Virus record (IMG/VR): IMGVR_UViG_3300042386_001233
Location: 124,001-188,000 of that record
DNA: 64,000 nucleotides
Strand: one strand, 5' to 3'
Shown here: in pieces, positions 4,541 to 28,302 of the stretch
Layout: each line of letters opens with the position of its first letter
How positions within the stretch are numbered: the first letter of the stretch is position 1
Position numbers and translations under genes: made by a program
The notes under the pieces: model-generated
Database searches by the model: none
Told to the model about the DNA's origin: nothing
Seen by the model: the letters and a program-made list of their open reading frames with translations, nothing else

Positions 4541-5602
4541 CTATTTATTCATGTAACTGAGTATCTTTTGTGCTGTATTTGTCCACGATAACTGATTAGC
4601 AGTATTTACACCAGCAGGATTAGTATTAATGTGATTATTGACCACATATCGCATATAATCGATCAATATGTCTTTTTCAGATTGATCTATTTTTGCCCAA
4701 TTACCCTGACCCATAAAAGCCTTGCCGTCATGGGCTTTTTCAGTAGTCGATATATCGACTAAATATGAGTTGTCTTTATTACAAAACTCTGTATGTGCTG
4801 AATAATTAGTAGTTATAACAGGTTTATTCATAGCCATACACTCTAATAACTCCATATTCCAACCCTCTGCTCTTGAGGGGAAAATACCACAATTAGCTTT
4901 TGATATTAGTTCTGCAATCTCAGAATGTTGAGCAAACCCCGAAAATAATTTAACTCTACTATCGTTTTGGTACATATTCTTCCACTGCTCAATTTCAGCA
5001 GGAGAGGAGTATCCATTGGTTGTTTCTGAAGCTAAAATCCAAAGTTCAACATCTGGATTATTTGGAAAAGCTTTGGTAAATAATTCTAATAAAATATCAT
5101 GACCTTTTCTTACTTCCCACTTGCCTATGTTAATAAATACATACTTATTATCAGATGGTTGTGAATATCTAGACTTATCAAATATCGACAAGTCAACGCC
5201 AAGCGGAGCAACATGAACTGGAGTTGAAACGTGCTTAGACACTACATCGGCTGCCCACTGACTAGTTGTAAAAATACCATCTGGAGTTTTTAGGCTATTG
5301 ATTTCTATATCACTAAAAGTATCTAGTTCAAAAAAGGGAAAAGCAAAATATGGACCTCTTCCTACATGCTCTAATAAGTCAAACTGATGCCATATTTTAA
5401 GATGAGGAGCATTTATATCGCATAAATATCTTTGTTTAAGAATATTTGATACAAAGGCGTGATCCTCTTGTGTTTCTACTGATGGCTGACCTATTGGGAA
5501 ATATGATATAACATTATTGAGAGCGCTAAGACCCTTAATAATATTGTAGGAAGCTATGCCATATCCTGTACTGTTGATTGGTGCCGACACATTGATGTTC
5601 AT
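4541..5602 (-). CDS. glycosyltransferase, GT-B fold (GT4-like)
   Basis: TGYG N-terminus, GKWEVRKGHDIL, FPSRAEGWNMELLECMAMNKPVITT (EX7E motif). Confidence 0.9.
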   Translation of the reverse strand: MNINVSAPINSTGYGIASYNIIKGLSALNNVISYFPIGQPSVETQEDHAFVSNILKQRYLCDINAPHLKIWHQFDLLEHVGRGPYFAFPFFELDTFSDIEINSLKTPDGIFTTSQWAADVVSKHVSTPVHVAPLGVDLSIFDKSRYSQPSDNKYVFINIGKWEVRKGHDILLELFTKAFPNNPDVELWILASETTNGYSSPAEIEQWKNMYQNDSRVKLFSGFAQHSEIAELISKANCGIFPSRAEGWNMELLECMAMNKPVITTNYSAHTEFCNKDNSYLVDISTTEKAHDGKAFMGQGNWAKIDQSEKDILIDYMRYVVNNHINTNPAGVNTANQLSWTNTAQKILSYMNK

Positions 5603-6720
5603 TTTTCAAATATCCTATTATGAGTATTGTTAACTTGTATAAATGTTGTTTTTTTACCAAAGTCTTTAATTTTAGAAGCTCCAACATAAGTGCATGAACT
5701 TCTAAGACCTCCCATTATATCCAACATAATATCCTCAGTAGTTCCCTTATATGGAATAATAACGGATTTTCCTTCACTGGTTCTATAGTTAGCAACTCCG
5801 TTATGATATTTATCCATTGCGTCCTTGGAACTCATACCATAGAACTTAAGACGTATCTTTCTTTTTTCTGTTTCATATCCAGGATTAAATGGTTGCCAAA
5901 ATTCTCCTGCAAGACCTGCTTTGACGCACTTATATTCGTATTCCCATTCCCCTTCACAGCAGTCTGTACCAGCAAGCATACTGCCAAGCATAACGAAATC
6001 TGTATTTGCACCAAAAGCTTTACAAATATCAGCAACTATTTTACAACCCCCATCGCTGCAAATGTGTCCACCAATACCATGAGCAGCGTCGGCACACTCC
6101 ATTACGGCAGACAGCTGGGGGTATCCCACGCCAGTTTTTAATCTTGTAGTACAAACAGATCCTGAACCTATACCGACCTTCACTATGTCCACCAGTCCGT
6201 GCATCAGCAGTTCTTCTGTCATTTCCGGAGTAACAACATTCCCAGCCATAATAACAATATCAGGATACATATCCCTAATATGTTTGACAGCCTTAACGAA
6301 CTTATCGCTATATCCGTTGGCAACATCAACGCATACATTTGGTAAATATAAGCCCTTAAGTTTTAGTCTGTCAAAAGTGTCTATGAGTTTCTCTATATCT
6401 GGCTTATTAATTCCTGTAGAATAGAAGGAAAGTTCTGGTTTTTGAGATTTTGTAAAATAGTCAACAATCTCATCAATAGAGTAGTGTTTATGCAAACATG
6501 TTATAGCATTGAATTGAGCCAGCACTCCTGCCATACTCATTGTGCCGGTTGTGTCCATATTGGCGGCAACAATAGGAGTACAAGATAAAAATCTTGTAGA
6601 ATATAGAAATTTAAAATCTCGTTGTAGAGAAACCTCTGATCTACTACCAAGTCTTGATCTCTTGGGTTTAATCAGTACATCGTCAAAATCTAGTTTTAGT
6701 TCATTGATAATTTTTTGCAT
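5599..6720 (-). CDS. guaC: GMP reductase
   Basis: LDFDDVLIKPKRS, PIVAANMDTTG, VDVANGYS, KVGIGSGSVCTTR...GVGYPQLSA, SDGGC, FYGMSS, YRTSEGK, GGLRSSCTYVGA. Confidence 0.92.
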   Translation of the reverse strand: MQKIINELKLDFDDVLIKPKRSRLGSRSEVSLQRDFKFLYSTRFLSCTPIVAANMDTTGTMSMAGVLAQFNAITCLHKHYSIDEIVDYFTKSQKPELSFYSTGINKPDIEKLIDTFDRLKLKGLYLPNVCVDVANGYSDKFVKAVKHIRDMYPDIVIMAGNVVTPEMTEELLMHGLVDIVKVGIGSGSVCTTRLKTGVGYPQLSAVMECADAAHGIGGHICSDGGCKIVADICKAFGANTDFVMLGSMLAGTDCCEGEWEYEYKCVKAGLAGEFWQPFNPGYETEKRKIRLKFYGMSSKDAMDKYHNGVANYRTSEGKSVIIPYKGTTEDIMLDIMGGLRSSCTYVGASKIKDFGKKTTFIQVNNTHNRIFEK

Positions 6721-6721
6721 T

Positions 6722-6925: not shown

Positions 6926-6926
6926 G

Positions 6927-7606: not shown

Positions 7607-8326
7607 TCATGTTAGGTATCCAATATAATTGTGTCTCATGCGATTAACTTCATCAATCATCTGTTGTAGATGTTTTGGGTCAGTAGACCGACCAGATGGG
7701 TTATGATAGTACAAACCGACTGGGTGGTTGACCATCTTTATTCTAGCACCTCCCGCAGCACAACGCAACCACATATCTCCATCAGAAGCCGTCTTATAGT
7801 TTTCATCAAATAGCCCAAATCTATCATGTAAATTCTTCTTCCATAACGGCATACAATGAGGACTGTTATTATTTAGTAGATTACGGAAAGAGTGGGGTAG
7901 GCATGGGTAGACTTGATCATATGTATTATCTTCATATTTTTCATTTGCTTCTGTAGAAACATAAGTAATTCCATATGCTATGTCTAGTAAAGGATCTCTG
8001 TCAAATGCTTTAAGCAAAATGTCTATACTGTCAGTACTTTTACGATCATCAATATTCCAGTTGCCTATTATAGATGATGAACATAAACGAATAGCAATGT
8101 TCCACGCAGCATATAATCCTGGATCTTTTTCTAGTTGATGATACTTTACATTATTAAACCTTTTTGCAATTGGTAGGATATAGTCTTTTTCATTTTCTGT
8201 AGAACTACAGTCAAGAAAAATAAATTCTGTATTATTAAATACTGATTGTTTTAGCATATCATTGAGATATCCTTCAATGAATTTTTCACCTTTATAAAAC
8301 GAACAAAATATTGAACATTTAAACAT
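7607..8326 (-). CDS. glycosyltransferase family 2
   Basis: FLDCSSTENE, GLYAAWN, NIDD, FGLFDENYKTASDGDMWLR; start moved to MFKCSIF. Confidence 0.88.
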   Translation of the reverse strand: MFKCSIFCSFYKGEKFIEGYLNDMLKQSVFNNTEFIFLDCSSTENEKDYILPIAKRFNNVKYHQLEKDPGLYAAWNIAIRLCSSSIIGNWNIDDRKSTDSIDILLKAFDRDPLLDIAYGITYVSTEANEKYEDNTYDQVYPCLPHSFRNLLNNNSPHCMPLWKKNLHDRFGLFDENYKTASDGDMWLRCAAGGARIKMVNHPVGLYYHNPSGRSTDPKHLQQMIDEVNRMRHNYIGYLT

Positions 8327-8339
8327 ATGCAGATTTTTA

Positions 8340-9443
8340 TTAGTTATATTTGAGAAAATGTATGATTTTATCGCAAATAAAGCTGATTTGACTTTCACTA
8401 AGAGTGGGATATGAAGGAACCATTAGACATTGGTTTTGTAATATTTTTGAGTTTTCATTAGATACGCATTTAATAGGCTTCAGATATTTATGCTGATGTA
8501 TATCATAAAACATTGGCCTTGTATCTATTCCTGCTTCGTACAAATATAATTCGAGTGATTTTTTCTTTTCTAAATCAAAATCTAGAAATCTCATACCAAG
8601 CATCCAATTAGAATGAGAGGTATCGGGATCTATATGCTGAAAAGATATATTAGGCAATTTTAAAATAGATCTATATTGATTAAAAATATTCTTTTTTTGA
8701 TTTATAATCCAGTCTAAATCATTTAGCTGACCATATAAAATAGCAGCTTGTATATTTGTCATTCTGTAATTATAGCCAAGATAATCATGAATGAATTTTT
8801 TATGGGATTGCCCTTGATTTTTTACTGTATTGATATAAGAGAACAGCTCATCATCAGAAGTTATAAAAGCACCACCTTCTCCGCATGTTATTGTTTTATT
8901 ACCAAAAAAAGATATTGATGAAGCAAAACATTCTGATCCAGATGGTTTATCTCCATAGGATCCCAAGAAGCCTTCACAATTGTCTTCTACAAAAATAGTA
9001 TTTGGAAATTTTTGTTTTAGTTTTGGAACATTGATAATATTTCCGATATTATGTACTATCAATACTGCGGTTTCTTCATCTAAAAGTTCTTCCAGATAAG
9101 AGTCTTCAAAATTCCAAGTATATAAATTGGCGTCTACTGGTATTAGTTCATACTTTTGAGTATATAAAAAAGCATTCCACGCAGCTACATATACATTATT
9201 TGGAACAATAATTTTTTTGATAGATGGATATTTATATTGTAGTGCCAAAGCTAATAGATGAGTAGCTGTCGTCCCATTATTCGTTAGTACGATTTTATGA
9301 TTGTTGTATTTAGCTTTTGATTTTAATAAATTTTTTGTTAAATCCAGATACTCTCCTTGAGATGATATCCAGCCACTATCCAGTGCTTTATGGGCATGTT
9401 TTAGATTATTTTTAGTTAGATACGGTTGGTATATAGGTATCAT
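8340..9443 (-). CDS. DegT/DnrJ/EryC1/StrS PLP aminotransferase (perosamine synthase-like)
   Basis: GWISSQG, TNNGTTA, EDNCEG, SFFGNKTITCGEGG (PLP Lys), GYNYRMTNIQAA. Confidence 0.92.
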   Translation of the reverse strand: MIPIYQPYLTKNNLKHAHKALDSGWISSQGEYLDLTKNLLKSKAKYNNHKIVLTNNGTTATHLLALALQYKYPSIKKIIVPNNVYVAAWNAFLYTQKYELIPVDANLYTWNFEDSYLEELLDEETAVLIVHNIGNIINVPKLKQKFPNTIFVEDNCEGFLGSYGDKPSGSECFASSISFFGNKTITCGEGGAFITSDDELFSYINTVKNQGQSHKKFIHDYLGYNYRMTNIQAAILYGQLNDLDWIINQKKNIFNQYRSILKLPNISFQHIDPDTSHSNWMLGMRFLDFDLEKKKSLELYLYEAGIDTRPMFYDIHQHKYLKPIKCVSNENSKILQNQCLMVPSYPTLSESQISFICDKIIHFLKYN

Positions 9444-9448
9444 AGAAT

Positions 9449-9757
9449 CTAGTATGTCTTATGACTTCTCTGTAAAAATTTACCATTATCTAACTCTTCT
9501 CCACTTATCTTAGCATTAATAATTTCAATAATTTTTTCATCTACTTCATTAATTAGTTGGTTTCTTTGAACATTTAAATCACAAGCTTTTTTAAGATACT
9601 GCCATAGTTCAATGGCTCCATTTTCAGTATCAAAATACTTTTGTTTATATTCTTCAAATGTCATTCGTCTAATTTCATACAGCAATTCTTGATTATTCCA
9701 CATTTTAAGATCTACTGTTGTTAGTTTATCTACTAGTGAGCCTAATGTATCGGCCAT
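9449..9757 (-). CDS. small helical protein (DUF4254-like)
   Basis: TLGSLVDKLTTVDLKMW...LNVQRNQLINEVD pattern. Confidence 0.55.
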   Translation of the reverse strand: MADTLGSLVDKLTTVDLKMWNNQELLYEIRRMTFEEYKQKYFDTENGAIELWQYLKKACDLNVQRNQLINEVDEKIIEIINAKISGEELDNGKFLQRSHKTY

Positions 9758-9759
9758 AT

Positions 9760-10311
9760 TTATTCTTTCTTTGTTAAAACTACTTGGTAATTTAGTGGTT
9801 TTCTGTCATCATTATCATTGTCTAAAATTTTATCTATTTTTACATTAAACAAATCATTAAACAGTTCACGATATCCGTATTCAGATATTCTCCAATAGTC
9901 AGGAAAGGGATTATGAAGATAGAAGTGGAATGGGGAGGACAAAAAAATCTGTCCATTGTTATTCAAAATATTGTTTAGTACTTCTGGTAATAGCCATATT
10001 TTTCCGATATGCTCTATAACTTCACAAGCAATAATAATATCAAATTTTCCAACTATTTCTGGAGTAAGGTCTAATACATCGTGTATATAATCTGCTTTAC
10101 TGTCTAAAAATTTATCACATGTTTTATATTCTATGTTTAATTTTGGAAGTAATTGATTTTGCAAATTGATATAATAGTTTTTAACCGGAGTATATCTTAT
10201 ATCCATTGGACCAATTTCAAGAATTCTCATACCATCTTTGCATGAAGGTAGGATAGAATTTTGATAGAAGTTAAATACAGAAGATCTTAATTTTAATACT
10301 TCTGGTCTCAT
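9760..10311 (-). CDS. class I SAM-dependent methyltransferase
   Basis: ILEIGP, FDIIIACEVIEH, SPFHFYLH.PFPDYWR. Confidence 0.85.
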   Translation of the reverse strand: MRPEVLKLRSSVFNFYQNSILPSCKDGMRILEIGPMDIRYTPVKNYYINLQNQLLPKLNIEYKTCDKFLDSKADYIHDVLDLTPEIVGKFDIIIACEVIEHIGKIWLLPEVLNNILNNNGQIFLSSPFHFYLHNPFPDYWRISEYGYRELFNDLFNVKIDKILDNDNDDRKPLNYQVVLTKKE

Positions 10312-10625
10312 TTAATTTCTTTCATGATATTATCCCATGTACCATAACTCAAAGCCTTATCGTCGATCCAATAATCATATATGGGCTTACCGCAAATTAA
10401 TAAATCATATTTGATATCATGGGACTTTAACCAATGTTCAGTCATCTTATATTCAGCCCAACCTCTAGCAGTATATATTGTTATGTGATAATTTTGATAG
10501 TATAGATTATTGATACTCTTAATAGCATTTTTTTGTGGAGTAGCAAGATACTTGTTGAAGGTTTTTTCTTCAGTACAGATAGTACCATCCATGTCTATGA
10601 TAAGATTTTTATGCGTTTCTCTCAT
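10308..10625 (-). CDS. HAD-superfamily phosphatase (capsule-locus type)
   Basis: IIDMDGTIC, IYTARG, GKP.YDYWIDDKA. Confidence 0.85.
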   Translation of the reverse strand: MRETHKNLIIDMDGTICTEEKTFNKYLATPQKNAIKSINNLYYQNYHITIYTARGWAEYKMTEHWLKSHDIKYDLLICGKPIYDYWIDDKALSYGTWDNIMKEIK

Positions 10626-10628
10626 ACA

Positions 10629-11537
10629 TTAATTAAAGAATGTCTCTTTGTAGTATCTTTCCATCAATAAGTTATTGGTCCAAGATTTAGGCTGGTAGTT
10701 AAAATCATAATTAAAATAATCTTTTTTTATCAGACTTATGATGTCTAGTCCAGACTCCATAGATAAAACAGTACCTCCGCCAAACCTTGCATTTACTTCA
10801 ATAATAAATGGTTGATCGTTGTTGTCAATAATGTATTGAAAGCAAGCTGGGCCCCTTATTTTTAATTTTTCTCCAATAAGTTTTGAGTAATCATACAGAA
10901 TGTCTTTATGAGATGTTCTTGAAGTCAATACCTCTCCACCAGCAACTCGTATTCTTTCTCTAGTAACCGCATCTATAAACTTATTAGTTTTGTCAAAATA
11001 ACAATCTACTGAATATTCTTTACCGAAAATTTGTTTTTGTAAGATAAATTTGTTGCTATCTATGGACATACTTTCATTGACACTATTTATAGTAGTAATA
11101 TTATTAGAAGAAAATCCAAAAACAGGCTTGCATATCAAAGGAAAACTATCAGGAAAAGGATATAGTTCTGGAAAATATTTTGTTATAAAATCAGCAAATA
11201 GTTTTTTATTAAAACAAGTATGTGATGTTTCAGAGTTAGAGTTTAGAAATACTACATCAGTATTTGATTTGTTTTTTTGTTCTATTTGTGATAGTATACA
11301 AACGGCTTCGTCTTGTAGTGGTACTATAAGTTTAACATTATTTTTAATAGCTGTTTCTAGAATATCTTGTTGAACGTTAGGATCTTTCCATGACAAACCT
11401 ATAATTATTTTACATATTTTTGACAATGGAACATCTTTGCTAGTTTCGTATGAGATAATATTGAATCCATTATCTATAAATCTCTCAGCTAAGGATACTC
11501 TGCGTCCAGCACCAACAAGCATAGCATTAAATGTCAT
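10629..11537 (-). CDS. ATP-grasp ligase (polysaccharide-locus type)
   Basis: AGRRVSL, KPVFGFSS, GKEYSVD, IIEVNARFGGG. Confidence 0.85.
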   Translation of the reverse strand: MTFNAMLVGAGRRVSLAERFIDNGFNIISYETSKDVPLSKICKIIIGLSWKDPNVQQDILETAIKNNVKLIVPLQDEAVCILSQIEQKNKSNTDVVFLNSNSETSHTCFNKKLFADFITKYFPELYPFPDSFPLICKPVFGFSSNNITTINSVNESMSIDSNKFILQKQIFGKEYSVDCYFDKTNKFIDAVTRERIRVAGGEVLTSRTSHKDILYDYSKLIGEKLKIRGPACFQYIIDNNDQPFIIEVNARFGGGTVLSMESGLDIISLIKKDYFNYDFNYQPKSWTNNLLMERYYKETFFN

Positions 11538-12190
11538 TATATTGTATTCCAGAATTTGTGAGGTTTAGACATTAGATTTATGTGACTAGGATATTTTTTA
11601 ATATATCTATGATGGAATATGGGAGTGTCTTTAGTATCCAATAAGTCTACCAAACAGATGAAAGAAGAGTCTATGCAATGAATCTCTTTTGCATTAAGAA
11701 TAGTATAGATCCAGTCAAAAAACTTACCGTGAGTTGGTGCGATTAAAGGAAGATCATGATGGATAATATATGGGGACTTGGCTATACTATGATCATGAAC
11801 GAATATATATTCATTCTCTTTGATGTTCAAAGAATCAAACAATTTTTTTTCGTTAGCTAAATTTCTGTTGATATAAAATTTTTGATACTCATATTCAATA
11901 GGAACACTTGCCATTTTATAAAATTGAGCAATAAAATTTTCTCTTGCATGAAGCTGGAATCCAATGTATAAAACGTCTTTTAGTCGATTCTTTTGTATAA
12001 AATTTTGAACATACTCGTCATCACCAACTATTAATTCTAAATTAGTTATATCGTTATACATATATTGAACATTGTCTTTATTGTGTGGTTTAACAAATAA
12101 AGAAACCTTATCGTTCTGTTCGCAGTAATGTCGAACTATTCCATGACAAGATATATGGTCCCCAAGCCCAAGATGATGATATATATACAT
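11537..12190 (-). CDS. putative glycosyltransferase-like protein
   Basis: HHLGLGD N-terminus and EIHCIDSSF; lies within the glycan cluster. Confidence 0.5.
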   Translation of the reverse strand: MYIYHHLGLGDHISCHGIVRHYCEQNDKVSLFVKPHNKDNVQYMYNDITNLELIVGDDEYVQNFIQKNRLKDVLYIGFQLHARENFIAQFYKMASVPIEYEYQKFYINRNLANEKKLFDSLNIKENEYIFVHDHSIAKSPYIIHHDLPLIAPTHGKFFDWIYTILNAKEIHCIDSSFICLVDLLDTKDTPIFHHRYIKKYPSHINLMSKPHKFWNTI

Positions 12191-15910: not shown

Positions 15911-15914
15911 TTGA

Positions 15915-16604: not shown

Positions 16605-16617
16605 AAGTATCTTTTGT

Positions 16618-20322: not shown

Positions 20323-20330
20323 GAGAAACT

Positions 20331-21071
20331 ATGAATTTGCTTTCCGCCCTGACGACATATAATGTTAATTCGAATAAAATGAGAATAGGTAATGAGCACG
20401 ATGGTGGATATATTATCAATGATCTCATAGTTAAAAATACCAAAAGATTAATTTCTGTAGGAATAGGCGGAGAAGACAATTTTGAATTACAGTGGGCAGA
20501 AAAATTCCCAACAACATTCATAGAAGCATACGACGGAACGTATCCGTGTAACAATTTATGTAATAAATTTCCTGATAGAATTAACAAAAACATTTTTTAC
20601 GTTCATAATGACGTTGGTTTTGGAGAAAAACAAATTCCTCTCAATACAATCGTAGATAGTAAAGAAGGAGTTTTATTAAAAGTTGATATAGAAGGTGGTG
20701 AATATACTGCATTTGATAATTTATATCCAGACAGGAATCTAACAGGACTCATCTTAGAAGTCCACGATTTACATATACCTGAGAATTGTCAAAAAATAGC
20801 AAAAATAATCACTGAAAATTTCAAAAACTTGCTTCTTTTCCATGTTCACGGAAATTCGTGGGGAGGTATGTTTGATTTGAACTTGACACCCAATGTCAAT
20901 GATGGTATACTAATCAAGAGGTTTCCTCATGTGCTAGAACTGACATTCATATCAAAGCATATTGTAGATAATTACTCTCTTGAAAAGCGTAAATTCCCTG
21001 TGGATGGTTTGGATAATACTAACAGACATGATTTTCCTGACATAGATCTTTATTGGATAAATGCTATATGA
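20331..21071 (+). CDS. FkbM-like methyltransferase
   Basis: RIGNEHDGGY, SVGIG, LLKVDIEGGEY, LEVH, HVHGN, LELTF. Confidence 0.75.
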   Translation: MNLLSALTTYNVNSNKMRIGNEHDGGYIINDLIVKNTKRLISVGIGGEDNFELQWAEKFPTTFIEAYDGTYPCNNLCNKFPDRINKNIFYVHNDVGFGEKQIPLNTIVDSKEGVLLKVDIEGGEYTAFDNLYPDRNLTGLILEVHDLHIPENCQKIAKIITENFKNLLLFHVHGNSWGGMFDLNLTPNVNDGILIKRFPHVLELTFISKHIVDNYSLEKRKFPVDGLDNTNRHDFPDIDLYWINAI

Positions 21072-21928
21072 TATACATCTCGCTATGTGCTATGCCAGAT
21101 AGATTAGAGACTAAAGATAGTTCGTCCCAATGTTTATCTTCTTTATTAGAACAAGAAACAACCCATGAATATAAAGTTCTTTTAAATATTCCTTTAAAGT
21201 TAAGGAACTACGAAAATACAACTATACCACAATGGGTATTGGATTTAGAAGCAACATATAGCGGTAAGCTTATGATTCTTAGAGATGATACGGACTATGG
21301 ACCAATATCTAATCTATTGTCTCCCATTAAGCTAATAAGTATGGATCCAAATGACATTATTATTATTTGTGATGATGATCATATGTATGATCCAAAAATG
21401 ATCGAATACCATCTTAAAAAATTGCAACAATATCCCGACCATCATGCTATTTGCTTTAGGGGTAATCAACCACTAGAACTAAGAACGTGGTATATAGATA
21501 ATGTTAAATATGGTAAACTCTATAATTCCTGTGTTTTATTTCCAACAAGAAATGATATTTATTTAAAATTGCCTGATCATTGGCATAGCGTATCATATCG
21601 TAGAAAGTTTATTCAACAAGACATTTTTGATCAAGATTTTTTAAATATATCTTGGAATAACGACATTTTAATGGGATGTTATGCATGGTCTCATGACTTT
21701 TATTTCTTATGCGCTAACTATGATCAAGAGAGTGATTTTAGACCCGTTAACTATGATGGTCGAGGAGCTAATTCTTTTCCTTTAATGAAGATGCTTCCAT
21801 TTTCTGGAGACAGTGGGTGCAATAGATGGAGAGATAAAAATAAGAAACCGGGTGAAGATATATGGGATTTAGAAAAATTTCGACAACTATTTGATAAGGA
21901 TAAAGGAATAATACAATTATGGAAATAA
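21053..21928 (+). CDS. GT-A glycosyltransferase
   Basis: ISL..PDRL, LNIP, DYGPIS.L, IIICDDD, NDI. Confidence 0.7.
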   Translation: MDKCYMIYISLCAMPDRLETKDSSSQCLSSLLEQETTHEYKVLLNIPLKLRNYENTTIPQWVLDLEATYSGKLMILRDDTDYGPISNLLSPIKLISMDPNDIIIICDDDHMYDPKMIEYHLKKLQQYPDHHAICFRGNQPLELRTWYIDNVKYGKLYNSCVLFPTRNDIYLKLPDHWHSVSYRRKFIQQDIFDQDFLNISWNNDILMGCYAWSHDFYFLCANYDQESDFRPVNYDGRGANSFPLMKMLPFSGDSGCNRWRDKNKKPGEDIWDLEKFRQLFDKDKGIIQLWK

Positions 21929-22689
21929 TCATATCTCTAACAACTGTACCTAATAGGTTATATGAGCATCACGGTCATTCAGCCACTAGGGCTGCTCTCA
22001 CCACTCTATTAGAACAGTCATATCCTTCATATTCTGTTCACTTAAATATTCCTTTAGAATATAGAGGAGAGCAAGTTTCTATACCAGATTGGCTTAATGA
22101 CTACACAAATAAGTACAAACATCTAAAAGTTTTTTTAACACAAGACTATGGATCAATAACCAAGCTAATACCAACTCTAGAGAGAGTTGAAGATCCAGAA
22201 AGCATTATCATATTAGCAGATGATGATCTTTACTATATGGACGGATTAATTTCTGCACATATCAATGGAAGACAAAAATATCCAGACTACGCATTAGGTT
22301 TTGCTGGTATGGCAGCAATAGATGGCTCATGTCACTTTTGTACAACAATACCAAAGGATACCAGAGTTAAGGTTTTAGAAGGATACAAAACAGTATCATA
22401 CCTAAGAAAATTTTTTGACATTAATGAACTCAAAAAAGATTTTGTTGGTAAGTCTTGGAGAGATGACGAAACATTATCGGCTTATATGGGGTATAAAAAC
22501 ATTAAAAAATTAGTATTATCATATGAAGGGGATACTGACTTTTCTCCAAGAGTAGAGTCTTTTCCAGTAACTGGTCATGTTCCAGCAGAAAGAGGTGGAT
22601 GTAATTTATTCAGGGACTGTTCTGATTCCCAAAACAAGTCAGAACAAAATATACAGGAATTTTTTAAACTTGGTTACTTAGAAAGATAA
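21919..22689 (+). CDS. GT-A glycosyltransferase (paralog of upstream gene)
   Basis: ISLTTVPNRL, LNIP, DYGSITKL, IILADDD, DDE. Confidence 0.75.
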   Translation: MEIIISLTTVPNRLYEHHGHSATRAALTTLLEQSYPSYSVHLNIPLEYRGEQVSIPDWLNDYTNKYKHLKVFLTQDYGSITKLIPTLERVEDPESIIILADDDLYYMDGLISAHINGRQKYPDYALGFAGMAAIDGSCHFCTTIPKDTRVKVLEGYKTVSYLRKFFDINELKKDFVGKSWRDDETLSAYMGYKNIKKLVLSYEGDTDFSPRVESFPVTGHVPAERGGCNLFRDCSDSQNKSEQNIQEFFKLGYLER

Positions 22690-22691
22690 TT

Positions 22692-23072
22692 ATGAAATAC
22701 TTTTATTGTGTCATTTTGGTCATTCTTTTGTCTAGCAGCACTAAAGCTCAACAATGGTCTAATCCTGAAAATGCTAATCTTACAAGCACTATGACAAATA
22801 TGATGGTTAATTTTGGTATAGCAGGAATGCAGTCATCCCAACCTTATGCAGCAAATAATACTAATCAATATCTAGATTATCAAAATGGATATTATCAAGA
22901 ACTACAAAATAATTTAACTAGAACTGAAATATATTTTCAAAAAAGACAAACTAATATGTACTACAGAGAACTTGAGTTTATTCAAAAACGAGAACTCAAA
23001 AATCTTAAAAAATATGATCAGTTGACCATACCAGAGCTTAATAGAATTTTTGGGAAAGATAGCAGATATTAA
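22692..23072 (+). CDS. hypothetical protein with signal peptide
   Basis: MKYFYCVILVILLSSSTKA-QQ N-terminus. Confidence 0.55.
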   Translation: MKYFYCVILVILLSSSTKAQQWSNPENANLTSTMTNMMVNFGIAGMQSSQPYAANNTNQYLDYQNGYYQELQNNLTRTEIYFQKRQTNMYYRELEFIQKRELKNLKKYDQLTIPELNRIFGKDSRY

Positions 23073-24004
23073 AATATTGGATTTACAATCCCATAACCTT
23101 GATATTTTTTTATTCCTTTATATCTAGGATTTTCTAAAGAAATAGCATGTAGTTTAAATACTTCTATATAGTCTTCAAATGTTTTAAGCTGATATTTTTT
23201 ATGCTTATTATTATAGCTTAATAGTAATGAAGCACAACCGACGACAAATGGATTGCTCATGCTTGTTCCGCTCATACTAGCATATCTATTTCCTGGAACA
23301 CATCCAATAATATTGTGACCAGGAGCCAAAAAGTCTAAATCATCTCCACTACAGGTAAATGAAGTTCTATTCATATTTTCGTCTATTGCTCCTATAGATA
23401 TAGTATTTTTATATCTAGCTGGATACATTATTTCGGCATTTTCTCCGCTATTTCCAGCAGCGCAAAAAACAACACATCCCTTACTATTAGCATAAGTGAT
23501 AGCATCCTCTATAACCTTCGCCGGTGCTGGTGAACCAAGACTCATAGTTATAAAATCTACATCTCCGTGGTTTGCAGCCCAGTAAATTCCGTCTGCAACT
23601 GTGTTCATTGATCCTGAACCATCGTCTCCAAGTGATTTAACCGGAATAATTTTAGTCATAGGAGCAACTCCAACCATGCCAAAACCATTATCTGACGCAG
23701 CTATAGTAGAAGAAACATGCGTTCCGTGACCAGCACCATCTATTGGTTCTTTATTTTGATTAATAAAATTTTTCCCAGGTAATAAATTATCTACTAAGTC
23801 TTTATGGGTTAGGTCACATCCTGTGTCTATAACAGCTACGACTACTCCTTCTCCTTTAGACTCTTTCCATAGATTAGGCACATTAAATTTTGTAAGTTCC
23901 CATCCCTTAAATTGTGGATCATTCACAGATAGTCCATACACATCCTCTCTAACATATGGTAACAGTGAAATATTATTTTTCTTTTTTAAAAAACCTCTAG
24001 CCAT
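23069..24004 (-). CDS. subtilisin-family (S8) serine protease, intracellular ISP-like
   Basis: VAVIDTG, HGTHV, AAGNSG, SGTSMS triad; no signal peptide; N-terminal LLPY. Confidence 0.93.
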   Translation of the reverse strand: MARGFLKKKNNISLLPYVREDVYGLSVNDPQFKGWELTKFNVPNLWKESKGEGVVVAVIDTGCDLTHKDLVDNLLPGKNFINQNKEPIDGAGHGTHVSSTIAASDNGFGMVGVAPMTKIIPVKSLGDDGSGSMNTVADGIYWAANHGDVDFITMSLGSPAPAKVIEDAITYANSKGCVVFCAAGNSGENAEIMYPARYKNTISIGAIDENMNRTSFTCSGDDLDFLAPGHNIIGCVPGNRYASMSGTSMSNPFVVGCASLLLSYNNKHKKYQLKTFEDYIEVFKLHAISLENPRYKGIKKYQGYGIVNPIF

Positions 24005-24006
24005 GA

Positions 24007-24756
24007 TTACTCCTTAGCTTGTTTTAGTGTTTTTTTTATCCAATCGTGGAATAAACTTACCCTAGTATGACAACTTTCGTCTGTATATGTTGAGTTTGGC
24101 TTCCCGTCATAGCCTATAACAGACGAGTGGATTCCGGCAAGTTTGTTGCCTATGAACAAACCCCCGCCACTATCCCCACTACCTATAAGATATTCTAGTT
24201 CTGTCATTTTCTCGTTTCTTCTCGATGGCGAGCAGATTAAAATCTTTCTTTCTGTTCTATCTATAAAATTAGATCCAGCTCTTTTTTTTCCATCTGCTCT
24301 TTCAATACCAGTATTAAATGTTCCAGTAAATCCCAAACCGGCCATAGAGCATACTTTACCTACCTCATCTGAATCAATATATAATTCAGGATAATGGTCT
24401 AATTTAATTTCTTTTTCTATATAACCTAAAGCAATATCATTATAACCAAATACTTCTGTTTTATAATCTTCGTGAATAATAACTTTATCAATCTTGTATT
24501 GTTCTTCACCCACTGTAACTGACCAACTATGGCAATTTTCTACCACATGAGCAGCTGTAATTATCCAATGTGGATCTATTATAACAGCAGATCCACAAGA
24601 CAGTCCTTTGCCGTCAAAACAACATAGTTTAACAACACTATGAAATTTAGACCCATATTCTACATACCTTGAGTCTGGAGTATTAGGATCTATGGTTCCA
24701 GAATAAGCTGCAGAACCTATCAAAAATACTACTAAAGCTAGTAAAAATTGACGCAT
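24007..24756 (-). CDS. trypsin-like (S1) serine protease with signal peptide
   Basis: ITAAHV, NDIAL, GDSGGG; hydrophobic N-terminus. Confidence 0.93.
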   Translation of the reverse strand: MRQFLLALVVFLIGSAAYSGTIDPNTPDSRYVEYGSKFHSVVKLCCFDGKGLSCGSAVIIDPHWIITAAHVVENCHSWSVTVGEEQYKIDKVIIHEDYKTEVFGYNDIALGYIEKEIKLDHYPELYIDSDEVGKVCSMAGLGFTGTFNTGIERADGKKRAGSNFIDRTERKILICSPSRRNEKMTELEYLIGSGDSGGGLFIGNKLAGIHSSVIGYDGKPNSTYTDESCHTRVSLFHDWIKKTLKQAKE

Positions 24757-25073: not shown

Positions 25074-25646
25074 TTATCCGCTTATTTCCATATAAATACA
25101 GTAATTCCCAACATTATCAAACCATGTTCCACTATCCCATATTCCACAATATACATATCCAGAGGATGGGGCAACTATATTTCCTCCCAATCCTATATAA
25201 AATGATCCAGTAGTAGTAAACGGTATTGAAGAAGCATCTGTTGTTGATAAAACGCCAAATACTGCATTATAATTGTTTATAAAAACATTAGGAGTACTAT
25301 AAATGCCACGAGCATCACTAATACAAGCACCAACAGCACAAGAAACACACCCTCTAACAGAGAAACTTATAGTCTGACCCGCTGTCACAAACTGCTGACC
25401 AATTCTTTTAAGTGTTGCTCCATCGGAATAAACTAATGATGTTTCAATGGGTAGGCACGTAATACTTTCGGCACTTATACACATTCTGGTTGGCGTGGGT
25501 GTGATTGTTGGTGTGGGTGTAGGGGTATTAGTTTTTGTTATTGTGGGTGTTAGACTTACTGTTGGAGTTATTGTTGGTGCTGGTGTGCTGCTACTCAGGG
25601 GTTTTTGAGTAGCTACTGGACAGCAATTTATATTAATAATTGTCAT
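25074..25646 (-). CDS. Cys-anchor + Thr/Pro stalk + putative lectin-like domain protein
   Basis: N-terminus [22 protein letters not shown] repeats, C-terminal F.IG...APSSG.VY.GIWD...DN.G.Y (PA-IL/LecA-like by eye). Confidence 0.6.
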   Translation of the reverse strand: MTIININCCPVATQKPLSSSTPAPTITPTVSLTPTITKTNTPTPTPTITPTPTRMCISAESITCLPIETSLVYSDGATLKRIGQQFVTAGQTISFSVRGCVSCAVGACISDARGIYSTPNVFINNYNAVFGVLSTTDASSIPFTTTGSFYIGLGGNIVAPSSGYVYCGIWDSGTWFDNVGNYCIYMEISG

Positions 25647-26233
25647 ATTTTATAACCACTTACTCTTGAGATCATAGGTCCAAAACATCCACCCGGAGAT
25701 ATTGATTCAAATTTTAGTAATGTACTATTAGAATTAGCAGTAAAAGTCTCAGAAATAGTATTCCAGCCAAAAGTTTCTGCTGAAACTTGAAACCCATAAC
25801 TTGGACACGTATAAGTATATGTTTTATTAAGTATTATATTAGTACCAGTTAGCGTTAATTTCATAACTTTATCAGCAACATTATTATCAAAACGCACCCC
25901 ACAATTTCCGCTTAGATCAAAATAAATTACATAATTTTGTCCAGGTATTGTTGTAATAGTTTGACTGATATATCCAATCCCACAAGCGTTTAAGTCTACA
26001 AAATATCTATCAAAACCATAATAATTATAATCTACAGAACTAAAAGTCCAATTACTAAGGGAATTTTCTAATGATCCGTTTATCACTATGTTAACAGGTT
26101 CTGCGCTTGGCGTAGGCGTTATTGTTTGTGTAGGAGTAGGGGTATTGGTTTTTGTTATCGTGGGAGTAGGAGTAACACTACTTAATGGTTTTTGAGTAGA
26201 CACTGGACAGCAATTAATACTTATGATGCTCAT
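25643..26233 (-). CDS. Cys-anchor + Thr/Pro stalk + DUF642/choice-of-anchor-C-like carbohydrate-binding domain
   Basis: N-terminus [22 protein letters not shown] repeats, NIVINGSLE...VDLNA...[13 protein letters not shown]...FDLSGN...FTA...L.F.S...FGP. Confidence 0.7.
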
Positions 26234-28302
26234 GGGATATAGTTAATTTCTCTTTGGGCTATAAAATAGTAGGTGGGTTCTGGTGTAGGTTGAGGCGTAG
26301 AACTTGGTGGTGGTGTAGAGCTTGGGGTTGCTGCCGGTGTGCTGCTAGATGTTGGTTCTGGAGTTTGAGTCGGAGTAATACTTGGAGTTGTTGTTATTGT
26401 CGGCGTTACGGTAGCAGTTGGTGTTGGGGTTGGAGTTACGCAGCATGATTCAAAGCAATACGTTCCAGGAAATGATACCCAAGAACTTGGAATATTAGAT
26501 GGCGAAACAGATGTAGAATCAAAATATGCATCTTGACAATTTGTAAAATGCATAGCCCTAATTCTAAAAGTTAGAGGCTGATCCGCACTTGTGCAAGTAC
26601 CGTCTCCACTTTTATTCTCAAAACTATTTAGATAATACTGATAAGATGAAGCGTTAGGATTAAATATGCAGATATTATCTACTATATCATCAACCGATCC
26701 GCTTTGACCATTTGCGTCCAGTGCTTGTATCTGATACCCCTCTATACAGCCTTGACTACCTGGTTCAGTATTTCTGTTCCATGTTAAATATATAATTACT
26801 TGGTTAGGGCTTTCAGTACCATCCTTTATACATGAACAGGCAGCACTTTGAATACTAGGAGTTAATAACTGACAATTATTTGTTGGCGTTGGGGTCGGAC
26901 TTTGGCTAGGCGGTGGAGTACAACAATTACAATTACTTGTATTTCCCTCAAATGCCCATACTGGAGGAACATTACATTGACAGGCAGTAGATATTCCAGT
27001 TATATTTAATCCTCCAACACAAGAAATATTAGCACTTGCTGTCCATTTATTAGCACATGAACTAGAACCAGTATATGCTACACTAGGATCACAAGTAACT
27101 GACATAAAGTATGTATCGCCACAAGCCAATGTGCCGCTACTAGTCCAATAATTTGGCATGACTTTAGTAAATAACAAATCTAGACTTATAGTTCTGGTTA
27201 TATTGTTACAATTTAATACAAATGTAGTCAAACCATTCCAGTCGCAGCAAGTAGCTCTACTTGGAGATGGCGTTAATGTCTGAGATGCTGTTAATGAAGG
27301 CGTTGGAGTTAGCGTTCTGGTGACTGTTTGGGTTGGTGTTCTTGTTGGAGTAGGAGTGCAACAACTGCAATTATCAAAATTGCCAACAAAACTCCAAATA
27401 GGAGGAGCGTTACATTGACAGGCTTCTTTTATTCCAGTAATTATTAGACCAGTAACACAGGATATGGTTAATGAAGAAGTCCATTTATTTATACATGAAC
27501 CTGATCCTGTGTATCTAGCATTTGGATCACATGTTATCGTAGAACTAAAAGTATCTCCACATGATAAACTTCCACTAGCTTGCCATGTATTTGCTGCTGT
27601 TTTTGTATAGGCTACTGGAATGACTAAATTGCCACAAGAAGCATCAAACTGTAAGAATGTATTACCGTCCCACTCACAACATGTAACAGTAGATGGGCTT
27701 GGAGTATTTGTCGGAGTAGCAGTAATTGTGATAGAAGGAGTAATAGAGGGTGTTACTGTAGCAGTAGCAGATCTTGTGATAGTAACTGTTGGGGTTTGGC
27801 TTACTGTAATACTTGGTGTTTGCGTTGGTGTTTGCGTAGGTGTTGGTGTCTGTGTATTGGTCTGAGTAATACTAGGAGTTAGTGTAGGGGTCGATGTAGC
27901 TGTTCGACTATTAGTGGGGGTTGCAGTTGGTGTTCTTGTATTAGTAGGGGTGTTTGTTCTAGTTGTTGTTATGCTTGGAGTTACGGTAGGGGTTACTGTT
28001 CTTGTTAGTGTTCTAGTTGGTGTTCTTGTTGGGGTAACTGTTCTAGTTACAGTAATGCTTGGAGTTATTGTAGGGGTAAGTGTTGGTGTCGGTGTTGGCG
28101 TTTTTTTAGGGGTTCTAGTTGGTGTTGGAGTTTTAGTAGGTGTCTTAGTAGGCGTTTTACTAAGGGAATTTCTATCTATAAAAGGACACCCATCATCCGA
28201 CCCTATCCTTGGAGGTTTTGGAGTTTCTGTTGGTGTTCTGGTTGGTGTTGGAGATGGCGGAAGTATTTTCCGCTCATTTTGTCCGTTCATTCTGTTTGTC
28301 AT
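26230..28302 (-). CDS. large mucin-like Thr/Pro/Ser-rich protein with two Cys-rich repeat domains
   Basis: 690 aa; long TPT tracts separate two ~110 aa homologous Cys-rich domains and a third beta-rich Cys domain. Confidence 0.8.
26920..27684 (-). repeat. internal duplication: two Cys-rich domains (27358-27684 and 26920-27252)
   Basis: TCC.W.G.T...W..SG.L.CGDT...TCDP...YTGS.SC.NKWT.S..ISCV.GL.ITGI..ACQCN.PP.W.F.GN..NC.CC occurs in both. Confidence 0.9.

What the first reader, a model, noticed from the sequence alone, without database searches (positions are those of the whole stretch)
4541..28302. Candidate phage-encoded mucin-type protein O-glycosylation system: GT60-like initiator, Fringe-like extender, donor synthesis and Thr/Pro stalk acceptors
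Seen: about 18 glycan genes, including a GT60-like enzyme (18386), Fringe/GT31-like (12190), several GT-A/GT-B enzymes, glf, a DegT aminotransferase, two methyltransferases, ATP-grasp, HAD and SGNH. They lie next to three proteins with long Thr/Pro/Ser tracts and no signal peptide (25074-28302). Known: GT60 enzymes transfer GlcNAc to protein hydroxyls (Skp1 hydroxyproline, trypanosome mucins), and GT31/Fringe extend O-glycans. Inference: the phage builds a cytoplasmic mucin-like glycocalyx on virion fibres, containing Galf and amino/methyl sugars. No flippase, Wzy, ABC exporter or undecaprenyl-P initiator is visible, which argues against host capsule/LPS synthesis.
Basis: partly seen in the sequence, partly recalled or inferred. 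Interest (0 to 1): 0.85.

Follow-up and report, generated by a model that had tools for sequence, protein, structure and literature searches.

The report
Phage protein O-glycosylation island with mucin-like targets
A large uncultured freshwater phage carries membrane-free sugar-adding enzymes, led by a relative of the enzyme protists use to start mucin-type glycosylation, next to Thr/Pro-rich genes, a pairing that recurs in many phages and some bacterial injection systems.

Summary
ORF 18386-19702 is a strong GT60 member: Pfam PF11397 at 260 bits, an invariant DxH motif, and a predicted fold closest to GT27 polypeptide GalNAc-transferases. About 15 other glycan genes lie around it. None of the ORFs in 4541-23072 has a membrane segment. 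The only three Thr/Pro-rich ORFs in the 64 kb lie at 25074-28302.

- In 80 related phage loci, TP-rich ORFs occur in 33 loci around GT60. They occur in none of 80 loci around the DNA ligase of the same phages.
- TP-tract density falls with distance from GT60.
- In a reciprocal test, 9 of 120 arbitrary viral (TP)6 loci carry a GT60 homologue, against 0 of 119 (AP)6 loci.
- GT60 also sits beside PT-tailed VgrG spikes in bacterial type VI secretion clusters.
- The cultured relative XacN1 has stain-positive virion glycoproteins.

Corrections to the reading:
- The conserved partner is a two-domain GT-A enzyme (16753-18414), not the Fringe-like gene.
- Most other sugar genes are a hypervariable cassette.
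- Virion location of this phage's TP proteins is not shown.
- About half of the relatives have no TP gene within 10 kb.

Verdict: likely a cytoplasmic GT60-initiated protein O-glycosylation system. It is a new variant of virus-encoded glycosylation, and no biochemistry has been done.

The parts
18386..19702 (+). GT60-family polypeptide HexNAc-transferase candidate (initiator), 438 aa, with a C-terminal all-beta domain (about residues 349-437)
   Evidence: PF11397 at E 4.6e-77, 260 bits. D114-S115-H116 is invariant in 19 homologues, which is the DxH motif of GT27/GT60 (PMC7185993). AF2 model pLDDT 82.5. The best PDB matches listed are mostly GT27 polypeptide GalNAc-transferases. Present in all 82 loci, which were selected on this gene, at 45-100% identity.
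16753..18414 (+). Conserved partner: tandem GT-A glycosyltransferase, 553 aa (HtrL_YibB-like N-domain plus a second GT-A domain with invariant E388-D389-D390). Its end overlaps the GT60 start.
   Evidence: PF09612 at E 1.9e-14. AF2 model pLDDT 85. The best PDB matches are two-GT-A enzymes: LH3, COLGALT1, K4CP chondroitin polymerase and PmHS2. Found in 75 of 82 GT60 loci and beside GT60 in many bacterial genomes.
19672..23072 (+). Right-hand variable cassette: SGNH-like (19672-20322), FkbM-like methyltransferase (20331-21071), GT2 (21053-21928) and two unknown ORFs (21919-22689, 22692-23072)
   Evidence: Pfam hits, some weak. Homologues occur in only 6-15 of 82 loci. FkbM is fused to the HtrL-like protein in Jiulongibacter L185.
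7607..15336 (-). Left-hand variable cassette: GT2, DegT/LegC-like aminotransferase, unknown ORF, methyltransferase-like, HAD-like, ATP-grasp, unknown ORF, Fringe/GT31-like (12190-12828), GT2_4-like, UDP-galactopyranose mutase (13583-14683), small hexosyltransferase lead (14680-15336)
   Evidence: Most genes occur in only 5-20 of 82 related loci, and close relatives carry different genes in the same place.
4541..5602 (-). GT4 (GT-B) glycosyltransferase at the outer edge of the island, separated from the rest by GMP reductase (5599-6720) and an Ndt-like ORF (6927-7457)
   Evidence: PF13692 and PF00534 at E about 1e-15. GMP reductase at 472 bits.
26230..28302 (-). TP690: 690-aa modular protein with five Thr/Pro/Ser tracts (largest about residues 42-211) alternating with Cys-rich globular modules, two of which are repeats. 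Candidate acceptor.
   Evidence: No Pfam hit. The globular modules are found only in very close relatives, always in the same slot. The tracts are not simple DNA tandem repeats.
25643..26233 (-). TP196: N-terminal 'INCCPV' motif, a TP tract of about 35 aa, and a DUF642 (carbohydrate-binding-like) domain. Candidate acceptor.
   Evidence: PF04862 at E 3.8e-8.
25074..25646 (-). TP190: the same N-terminal motif, a TP tract of about 55 aa, and a Cys-containing globular C-domain. Candidate acceptor.
23069..24756 (-). S8 subtilase (23069-24004, no signal peptide) and trypsin-like protease (24007-24756, N-terminal hydrophobic segment). They are conserved neighbours between the glycan island and the TP slot. 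Whether they belong to the system is unknown.
   Evidence: Found in 53 and 51 of 82 loci.

Best explanation
The region is a phage-encoded protein O-glycosylation system that works in the host cytoplasm.

Shown here:
- A GT60-family enzyme (18386-19702) and a tandem GT-A glycosyltransferase (16753-18414) form a conserved, translationally overlapping pair.
- On both sides lies a cassette of soluble glycosyltransferases and sugar-tailoring enzymes that differs between close relatives.
- Genes for proteins with long Thr/Pro tracts cluster next to GT60 in phages and bacteria far more often than chance allows.

Inferred:
- GT60 transfers a HexNAc, probably GlcNAc from host UDP-GlcNAc, onto Thr (or Ser) hydroxyls of the TP tracts. 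Its protist relatives do this on mucins.
- The tandem GT-A enzyme adds the next one or two sugars, or a repeating disaccharide.
- The variable cassette (Galf via Glf, an amino sugar via DegT, methylation, ATP-grasp acylation) makes the glycan strain-specific.
- The acceptors are modular proteins in which extended TP stalks carry lectin-like or Cys-rich heads. They are most likely displayed on the virion (tail, baseplate or head appendages), where the glycan stiffens and protects the stalk and diversifies the surface.

Virion display is the least secure step.
For: GT60 identity.

Soluble machinery with no export genes.

Conserved GT60 plus tandem GT-A core with variable flanks.

Co-occurrence of GT60 and TP-tract genes:
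- 48 TP-rich ORFs in 1541 kb around GT60 (33 of 80 loci) against 0 in 1031 kb around the ligase of the same phage group (Fisher p = 3.5e-12, not corrected for relatedness).
- S/T/P-rich ORFs in 42 of 80 GT60 loci against 0 of 80 ligase loci.
- TP-tract density falls from about 30 bp/kb at 1-4 kb to about 7 bp/kb at 9-10 kb from GT60 in phages. In bacteria it falls from 18 to 0-2 bp/kb.
- On a GT60 tree of 156 loci, the TP-adjacent state needs at least 31 changes, so the linkage arose or was kept many times.
- Reciprocal and specificity test: 9 of 120 arbitrary IMG/VR (TP)6 loci carry GT60 homologues (about 27-94% identity to the nearest query in a 13-sequence GT60 panel) against 0 of 119 (AP)6 loci, p = 0.003.

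Independent architectures:
- TP ORFs lie directly upstream of GT60 in the L066-L082 clade.
- In XacN1 the cluster abuts the baseplate wedge genes and a 3313-aa ORF with a PT linker.
- In Achromobacter and Ralstonia, GT60 lies in a type VI secretion cluster next to a VgrG with a (PT)n tail. Burkholderia dolosa L230 shows the same arrangement, identified only from N-terminal sequence likeness, with a PPPSET-repeat tail.
- Other contexts are a weak crAss-muzzle-like TP protein (L189, just below the Pfam cut-off) and a Tat-signal-like TP protein between two GT60 paralogues in Jiulongibacter.

Virion link in relatives: TP proteins of L030 and L072 match PHROG virion-structural, baseplate and tail-fibre families. 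Others carry Laminin_G_3 or FGE-sulfatase-like lectin folds. XacN1 virions contain at least two periodic-acid-Schiff-positive proteins (PMC5852040).
Against: - There is no biochemistry. The donor sugar, the acceptor residue and the linkage are all inferred from family membership.
- No structural homology, proteomics or expression data place this phage's own TP proteins in the virion. The locus sits among replication and early-type genes (RuvB, RIIA/B), not in a structural module.
- 47 of 80 related loci keep GT60 and the tandem GT-A without a TP ORF within 10 kb. Other acceptors must therefore exist, or the acceptor genes lie elsewhere in those genomes.
- The loci compared are related to each other, so the simple p-values overstate independence.
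- PT linkers are common flexible linkers, and some of the co-location in bacteria could reflect general enrichment in surface and secretion gene islands.
Confidence: 0.55

Rival explanations
1. Same enzymology, different destination. The TP proteins are glycosylated by the GT60 system but are not virion parts. They might be released at lysis, or act inside the cell, for example as adhesive or lectin-like 'public goods', protease-resistant matrix proteins, or host-takeover factors.
For: The TP genes lie in an operon with an actin-like protein, RuvB and two proteases, not with structural genes. The window's TP proteins have no match to known virion proteins. In Jiulongibacter and Arcticibacterium the TP protein next to GT60 has a Tat-like export signal, so it is a secreted cell protein.
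Against: In several other lineages the GT60-adjacent TP proteins are tail, baseplate, spike or virion-structural types. XacN1 virions carry glycoproteins.
Confidence: 0.2
2. The gene set remodels a host cell-envelope polysaccharide (LPS, capsule or other glycan) during infection, as usually assumed for 'LPS gene' clusters in large aquatic phages. The TP genes are unrelated neighbours.
For: The genes are typical of polysaccharide loci: Glf, a DegT/LegC-like aminotransferase, GT2 and GT4 enzymes, FkbM-like and HtrL_YibB-like proteins. The cassette is hypervariable, like O-antigen loci. Soluble glycosyltransferases could act on host lipid-linked intermediates.
Against: There is no initiating phosphoglycosyltransferase, flippase, polymerase, ABC exporter or any membrane protein in 4541-23072. 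The one invariant enzyme belongs to a family whose characterised members glycosylate polypeptides, and its fold is closest to the mucin-initiating GT27 enzymes. The TP association is specific and reciprocal.
Confidence: 0.12
3. The glycosyltransferases hypermodify phage DNA (base glycosylation) to evade restriction.
For: Phage glycosyltransferases often do this (reviewed in PMC12619734). Nucleotide-metabolism genes (GMP reductase, an Ndt-like ORF) interrupt the island.
Against: No hydroxymethylase of the ThyA type is seen in the window, only ThyX. The complexity of the set (Glf, aminotransferase, ATP-grasp, about 9 glycosyltransferase domains) and the GT60 identity do not fit known DNA glycosyltransferases. 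The TP co-occurrence is unexplained by this model. Only 64 kb of a genome of at least 244 kb was seen, so modification genes elsewhere cannot be excluded.
Confidence: 0.04
4. GT60 modifies some other protein, for example the capsid or tail tube as in mycobacteriophages, or a host protein. The TP tracts are unmodified flexible linkers that happen to lie in a variable-gene hotspot.
For: Half of the relatives lack a TP gene near GT60. The slot between the proteases and the actin-like gene is clearly an insertion hotspot for large variable ORFs.
Against: Distance decay, the reciprocal (TP)6 against (AP)6 test, and recurrence in unrelated genomic contexts, including type VI secretion clusters, argue against a hotspot coincidence.
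Confidence: 0.1

Closest known systems
GT60 polypeptide alpha-GlcNAc-transferases of protists (Trypanosoma cruzi mucin initiation; Dictyostelium Gnt1 acting on Skp1 hydroxyproline)
   Same: Same Pfam family (PF11397) at high score, the DxH motif, a GT-A fold nearest GT27, and Thr/Pro-rich acceptor-like proteins encoded next door. Like Gnt1, the enzyme is soluble and cytoplasmic. The enzymology of the protist enzymes is from established knowledge and from PMC7185993.
   Different: Encoded by a tailed phage. It carries an extra C-terminal beta domain and is paired with a tandem GT-A enzyme. No prolyl hydroxylase lies in the region, so Thr or Ser is the likelier acceptor than Hyp. Activity is untested.
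Animal mucin-type O-glycosylation (GT27 polypeptide GalNAc-transferases plus GT31 core extension)
   Same: A sister-family initiator with a similar fold, PTS-like tandem tracts as presumptive acceptors, and a GT31/Fringe-like enzyme in this strain's cassette.
   Different: Not Golgi-lumenal and has no membrane anchors. The initiator is GT60, not GT27. The GT31-like gene is not conserved in relatives.
Autonomous virion glycosylation in giant viruses (chlorovirus capsid glycans; Mimivirus/Megavirinae fibril glycans built by clade-specific virus-encoded sugar pathways)
   Same: Virus-encoded, cytoplasmic, with clade-variable clusters that make rare bacterial-like sugars, including DegT-type amino sugars and methylation (PMC10117803 and PMC8456856, listed).
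   Different: The host is a bacterium and the virus a tailed phage. The initiator family (GT60) and the mucin-like TP acceptors differ from the known giant-virus systems.
Mycobacteriophage virion glycosylation (Freeman et al. 2023, as summarised in PMC12619734)
   Same: Phage-encoded glycosyltransferases glycosylate phage proteins in the cytoplasm.
   Different: There the glycans sit at the C-termini of the capsid and tail-tube subunits. Here the presumptive acceptors are long TP tracts in separate modular proteins, and the initiator is GT60. That paper was not available to read.
Serine-rich-repeat adhesin glycosylation in Gram-positive bacteria (GtfA/GtfB O-GlcNAc initiation in the cytoplasm, then extension)
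   Same: Cytoplasmic O-HexNAc initiation on long hydroxy-amino-acid repeats followed by variable extension (comparison from established knowledge).
   Different: Those initiators are GT4 (GT-B) enzymes and are coupled to accessory Sec export. Neither a GtfA/B pair nor SecA2/Y2 is present here.
XacN1-group jumbo phages (XacN1, Xoo-sp13, CM1, RAS14)
   Same: The only cultured phages with a GT60 homologue (45-49% identity). They also have the tandem GT-A partner (38-41% identity in XacN1 and Xoo-sp13), and XacN1 has stain-positive virion glycoproteins.
   Different: They add a carbamoyltransferase between the two genes. The cluster abuts the baseplate genes, and the nearby giant ORF has only one short PT linker. 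The authors did not identify the glycoproteins or the GT family.

Membership tests
CAZy GT60 / Pfam PF11397 (polypeptide GlcNAc-transferase family) | Full-length match to the family profile above the curated cut-off | tested here: met
   260.3 bits against a cut-off of 21. Two stretches match; the best covers profile positions 96-350 of 352. Bacterial homologues from this study score similarly.
CAZy GT60 / Pfam PF11397 (polypeptide GlcNAc-transferase family) | DxH metal-binding motif in place of DxD, shared only with GT27 | tested here: met
   D114-S115-H116 is invariant in the 19-sequence alignment A1. The motif is described in PMC7185993.
CAZy GT60 / Pfam PF11397 (polypeptide GlcNAc-transferase family) | GT-A fold most similar to GT27 | tested here: met
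   The best PDB matches listed are GalNAc-T2, T1, T4 and T12, TgGalNAc-T3 and PGANT9, at E about 1e-8 to 1e-6 and TM 0.41-0.51. No GT60 structure exists in the PDB by sequence search.
CAZy GT60 / Pfam PF11397 (polypeptide GlcNAc-transferase family) | Transfers GlcNAc from UDP-GlcNAc to a polypeptide Thr/Ser/Hyp hydroxyl | not testable with these tools
   Only indirect support is available: the genomic linkage to TP-tract proteins.
CAZy GT60 / Pfam PF11397 (polypeptide GlcNAc-transferase family) | Assignment by the dbCAN/CAZy HMM | not tested
PF11397 was used as a proxy.
GT31 / Fringe-like (ORF 12190-12828) | Profile match above the cut-off and a DxD-type motif | tested here: met
   PF02434 scores 29.1 bits against 21, and PF01762 scores 23.0 against 23. 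The sequence contains 'FFCDNDTF'. The match is modest and the protein is short (212 aa).
   A homologue occurs in only 6 of 82 loci, five of them about 100% identical.
Wzx/Wzy- or ABC-dependent surface polysaccharide pathways | Initiating polyprenyl-phosphate glycosyltransferase, flippase or ABC exporter, polymerase (integral membrane proteins) | tested here: not met
   No such Pfam hit and no predicted membrane segment in any ORF of 4541-23072.
Phage DNA base glycosylation (T-even type) | Base hydroxymethylase plus a dedicated DNA glycosyltransferase | tested here: inconclusive
   The window holds only ThyX. Just 64 kb of a genome of at least 244 kb was visible.
Virus-encoded virion glycosylation | The glycosylated acceptor is a virion protein | tested here: inconclusive
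   Relatives' TP proteins match virion, baseplate and tail-fibre PHROGs, and XacN1 virions stain for glycoprotein. The window's own TP proteins have no informative homologues.

The most novel reading that the evidence does not exclude
GT60 plus its tandem GT-A partner would be the core of a widespread, so far undescribed prokaryotic cytoplasmic 'mucin-type' O-glycosylation system. It would decorate Thr/Pro stalks on parts of contractile injection machines and their relatives. Those parts include phage tail, baseplate and head appendages in a very abundant group of freshwater jumbo phages, and PT-tailed VgrG spikes of type VI secretion systems in Burkholderiales. A hypervariable sugar cassette would give each strain its own glycan coat.
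Probability: 0.4. Interest if true: 0.85.

Novelty: new variant of a known kind. Interest (0 to 1): 0.72.

Why it matters
Virus-encoded glycosylation of virus proteins is established for giant eukaryotic viruses and a few mycobacteriophages. No initiating enzyme that targets mucin-like tracts has been described in phages. The function of bacterial and phage GT60 members also appears unstudied: no paper turned up in the searchable library.

Three things make this family worth following up.
- It is large. More than 7,400 homologues passed E 1e-5 in the metagenome protein search.
- The GT60/TP linkage extends to type VI secretion spikes.
- A cultured model with stain-positive virion glycoproteins already exists (XacN1).

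Together these make the hypothesis directly testable. If it is true, it would explain many 'LPS-like' gene islands of large aquatic phages as virion-glycan islands. It would also add a new source of surface diversity in phage-host interactions, and supply soluble enzymes for making mucin-like glycoproteins in bacteria.

Tried and rejected
- A megablast of the region against cultured phages found nothing.
- Sequence searches of the PDB with GT60 and with the HtrL-like protein gave only chance hits.
- NCBIfam added nothing for GT60, the Fringe-like gene or the unknown ORFs.
- tblastn of TP690, and of the N-terminal domains of relatives' TP proteins (L066, L078), against cultured phages found nothing.
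- The ESM Atlas search on the TP690 globular modules scored below 0.8. It gave only hints of FN3 or Ig-like folds and was not used as evidence.
- The PHROG family phrog_15511 hit by most TP proteins probably reflects the low-complexity tract and was not used.
- Promoter and terminator scans were at chance level.
- TP tracts are not simple DNA tandem repeats, so slippage artefacts were rejected.
- I considered a eukaryotic giant-virus origin for the window. I rejected it because of RIIA/RIIB, other PHROG matches and the IMG/VR phage contigs.
- I checked whether the 'moraphage' lineage paper describes this group. It reports core glycosyltransferases but gave no way to test identity.
- I started a whole-genome TP-tract scan of XacN1 and dropped it as low-yield.
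- The Freeman 2023 paper could not be read.

Full report
WHAT IS THERE

The window comes from a large tailed phage. It encodes RIIA (35267-37951), RIIB (34302-35171), an ATP-dependent DNA ligase, RuvB, ThyX and UvdE. It is 100% identical to part of a 243.8 kb IMG/VR contig. G+C is about 34%.

- GT4 (4541-5602)
- GT2 (7607-8398)
- a DegT/LegC-like aminotransferase (8340-9443)
- ATP-grasp (10629-11537)
- a Fringe/GT31-like protein (12190-12828; 29 bits against a cut-off of 21; 'FFCDNDTF' motif)
- UDP-galactopyranose mutase (13583-14683)
- an HtrL_YibB-like protein (16753-18414)
- a GT60/PF11397 enzyme (18386-19702; E 4.6e-77)
- GT2 (21053-21928)

The methyltransferase, HAD, SGNH and GT2_4 calls are weak. 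The ORF at 5599-6720 is a GMP reductase and 6927-7457 is Ndt-like, so neither is a glycan gene. The ESM Atlas adds two leads: a small hexosyltransferase at 14680-15336 and a macro domain at 15329-15943.

A hydropathy scan finds no membrane segment in any ORF of 4541-23072. The three ORFs at 25074-28302 are the only Thr/Pro-rich ORFs among 114 in the window. They overlap stop-to-start, lack signal peptides, and combine TP tracts with a DUF642 domain or Cys-rich modules.

THE GT60 ENZYME

No solved structure matches the protein by sequence. An alignment of 19 homologues (60-85% identity) has an invariant D114-S115-H116. Replacement of DxD by DxH is a signature of GT27 and GT60. These are sister families that share polypeptide Ser/Thr O-glycosylation, and GT60 is known only from prokaryotes and protists (PMC7185993). 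The AlphaFold2 model (pLDDT 82.5) finds animal and Toxoplasma polypeptide GalNAc-transferases among its best PDB matches. Every membership feature that could be tested here is met. Activity cannot be tested.

THE CONSERVED CORE AND THE VARIABLE CASSETTE

I fetched 80 IMG/VR loci (59-100% identity to GT60; contigs up to 244 kb) and the two cultured-phage loci. Across these 82 loci the 553-aa HtrL-like protein accompanies GT60 in 75. Most other glycan genes of the window occur in only 5-20 loci and are replaced by different genes in close relatives.

The 553-aa protein models as two tandem GT-A domains, with an invariant EDD motif in the second. Its best structural matches are two-GT-A enzymes: LH3, COLGALT1, K4CP chondroitin polymerase and PmHS2.

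So the conserved system is GT60 plus a bifunctional GT-A enzyme. The Fringe-like gene, Glf, DegT and the rest form a hypervariable decoration cassette.

IS GT60 LINKED TO TP-TRACT PROTEINS?

I defined a TP-rich ORF as one with T+P of at least 60% in a 40-aa window, and with at least 20% of each residue.

- Around GT60 there are 48 such ORFs in 1541 kb (33 of 80 loci). Around the DNA ligase of the same phage group there are none in 1031 kb (0 of 80 loci) (Fisher p = 3.5e-12, uncorrected for relatedness). With a looser S/T/P criterion the counts are 42 of 80 against 0 of 80.
- TP-tract density declines with distance from GT60, both in phage loci and in 80 bacterial-genome loci.
- On a GT60 tree of 156 loci, the TP-adjacent state (47 loci) needs at least 31 changes, against 40 for shuffled labels. 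The association is therefore spread over the tree and is not one inherited block.
- In the reciprocal direction, 9 of 120 arbitrary IMG/VR loci holding a (TP)6-coding run carry a GT60 homologue. None of 119 loci holding an (AP)6 run does (p = 0.003). Those homologues are about 27-94% identical to the nearest query in a 13-sequence GT60 panel, and one further locus carries the tandem GT-A. The hydroxy amino acid therefore matters.

The architectures also differ between lineages:
- In the window's clade the TP genes sit in a variable slot between two proteases and an actin-like gene.
- In a deeper clade, TP ORFs with TPS-rich tracts totalling up to about 880-1270 residues (L072, L082) lie directly upstream of GT60.
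- In XacN1 and Xoo-sp13 the cluster abuts the baseplate wedge genes and a giant ORF with a PT linker.
- In Achromobacter and Ralstonia, GT60 (PF11397, 279 bits in Achromobacter L215) lies inside a type VI secretion cluster. The Achromobacter locus reads TssF-TssG-TssA ... GT60 ... Rhs ... VgrG ... TagF, and the VgrG spike ends in a (PT)n tail. Burkholderia dolosa L230 has the same arrangement with a PPPSET-repeat tail, though its VgrG was identified only from N-terminal sequence likeness.
- In Jiulongibacter, a TP protein with a Tat-like signal lies between two GT60 paralogues. It is followed by a carbamoyltransferase and an FkbM::HtrL fusion.

I regard the functional link between GT60 and TP-tract proteins as well supported by comparative genomics.

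WHERE DO THE GLYCOPROTEINS GO?

This is the weak point. For relatives there is support:
- GT60-adjacent TP proteins match PHROG virion-structural, baseplate-wedge and tail-fibre families (L030, L072).
- Others carry lectin-type heads: Laminin_G_3, FGE-sulfatase-like and DUF642.
- One has a weak crAss muzzle-like N-terminus, just below the Pfam cut-off.
- VgrG is the cellular homologue of a phage tail spike.
- XacN1, which has a GT60 at 48% identity, has at least two periodic-acid-Schiff-positive virion proteins. Its authors attributed these to its two glycosyltransferases (PMC5852040).

For the window's own TP proteins nothing informative was found. Their genomic neighbours are replication-type genes. 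In addition, 47 of 80 relatives have no TP ORF within 10 kb of GT60. Either the acceptors lie elsewhere in those genomes or other acceptors exist.

MECHANISM PROPOSED

Shown: a soluble GT60 plus tandem GT-A pair, variable soluble tailoring genes, and adjacent TP-tract proteins.

Inferred: GT60 adds HexNAc, probably GlcNAc from host UDP-GlcNAc, to Thr or Ser of the TP tracts in the cytoplasm. No prolyl hydroxylase is present, which argues against hydroxyproline as the acceptor. The tandem GT-A extends the glycan. The cassette adds Galf, an amino sugar, methyl and acyl groups. The glycosylated stalks are then displayed, most likely on virions.

RIVALS

- Host envelope remodelling: the gene types fit, but there is no membrane machinery, and the model does not explain the GT60 identity or the TP linkage.
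- DNA glycosylation: only ThyX is seen, and the gene set does not fit.
- A non-virion destination for the same glycoproteins.
- GT60 acting on another substrate, with the TP tracts as inert linkers.

COMPARISON AND NOVELTY

Functionally this resembles three known systems: mucin initiation by protist GT60 and animal GT27 enzymes, autonomous glycosylation of giant-virus fibrils (PMC10117803 and PMC8456856), and cytoplasmic glycosylation of serine-rich-repeat adhesins.

It is a member of GT60 by all the sequence and structure criteria tested. It is not a GT27 system, not a Wzy or ABC polysaccharide pathway, and not the mycobacteriophage C-terminal capsid system.

I found no paper on the function of bacterial or phage GT60, or on GT60 with PT-tailed VgrG. 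I rate it a new variant of a known kind, with an interest score of about 0.7. No biochemistry has been done, but the family is very large (more than 7,400 homologues), and a cultured model phage makes the hypothesis directly testable.

Noticed in passing
L215:7989-9371 and 13055-15523; L206:7968-9362 and 10288-13149; L230:8031-9380 and 13308-15920: In Achromobacter and Ralstonia chromosomes a GT60 homologue lies inside a type VI secretion cluster (TssF, TssG, TssA, Rhs effector and TagF confirmed by Pfam in Achromobacter L215). It sits next to a VgrG spike whose C-terminus is a long (PT)n tail. Burkholderia dolosa L230 shows the same arrangement with PPPSET repeats, but its VgrG was identified only from N-terminal sequence. 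This suggests glycosylated T6SS spikes.
   Followed up: partly
window 28306-29307 (-): An actin homologue of the Volactin family (Pfam 224 bits) lies directly upstream of the TP genes. It is conserved in 39 of 82 related loci. Its role in this phage is unknown.
   Followed up: no
window 23069-24756 (-): An S8 subtilase (no signal peptide) and a trypsin-like protease (N-terminal signal or membrane segment) are conserved in about 50 of 82 loci. They lie between the glycan island and the slot that holds the TP genes. A link to TP-protein processing or protection is possible but untested.
   Followed up: no
window 25074-28302 (-); also L010, L011, L023, L069: Cysteine doublets flank the TP tracts. 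The N-termini read 'I(N/S)INCCPV', and the modules are bounded by 'TCCEWDG', 'NCNCCTPPP' and 'ESCCVTPTP'. These could be inter-chain disulfide knots that staple a multimeric stalk. This is unexplained.
   Followed up: no
window 27914-28435 (+): A 173-aa 'GVGVLV' ORF is the antisense shadow of the TP690 Thr/Pro tract, not a gene. The same region shows a local G/C-skew inversion.
   Followed up: yes
L185:5948-13145: In Jiulongibacter sediminis the gene order is: short GT60 paralogue, TP protein with a twin-arginine-like signal, GT60, carbamoyltransferase, FkbM methyltransferase fused to the HtrL-like tandem GT-A. The carbamoyltransferase also sits between GT60 and the HtrL-like gene in XacN1 and Xoo-sp13.
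   Followed up: partly
L173:7215-7937: In a Gemmatimonadaceae MAG, the ORF directly upstream of GT60 and the HtrL-like gene is a PqqD-like (RiPP-recognition-type) domain fused to a TP/ST-rich tail.
   Followed up: no
window 15329-16386 (-): A macro-domain-like ORF (ESM Atlas lead, score 0.95) and two small ORFs are conserved (41-45 of 82 loci). They are transcribed divergently from the tandem GT-A/GT60 pair. They may be anti-defence genes rather than glycan-related.
   Followed up: partly
window 24683-25069, 33659-34291, 44798-45778 (-): Three HNH-endonuclease-type genes are scattered through the window. The first overlaps the trypsin-like gene by 74 nt and separates the TP genes from the proteases.
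   Followed up: no
window 1810-4001, 5599-6720, 43555-44277, 48912-48988, 53408-55834: Other accessory genes: a sigma-70 region-4 protein, a ferritin-like protein, endonuclease VII, GMP reductase, an Ogg-like glycosylase, tRNA-Ile(TAT), UvdE and ThyX.
   Followed up: no
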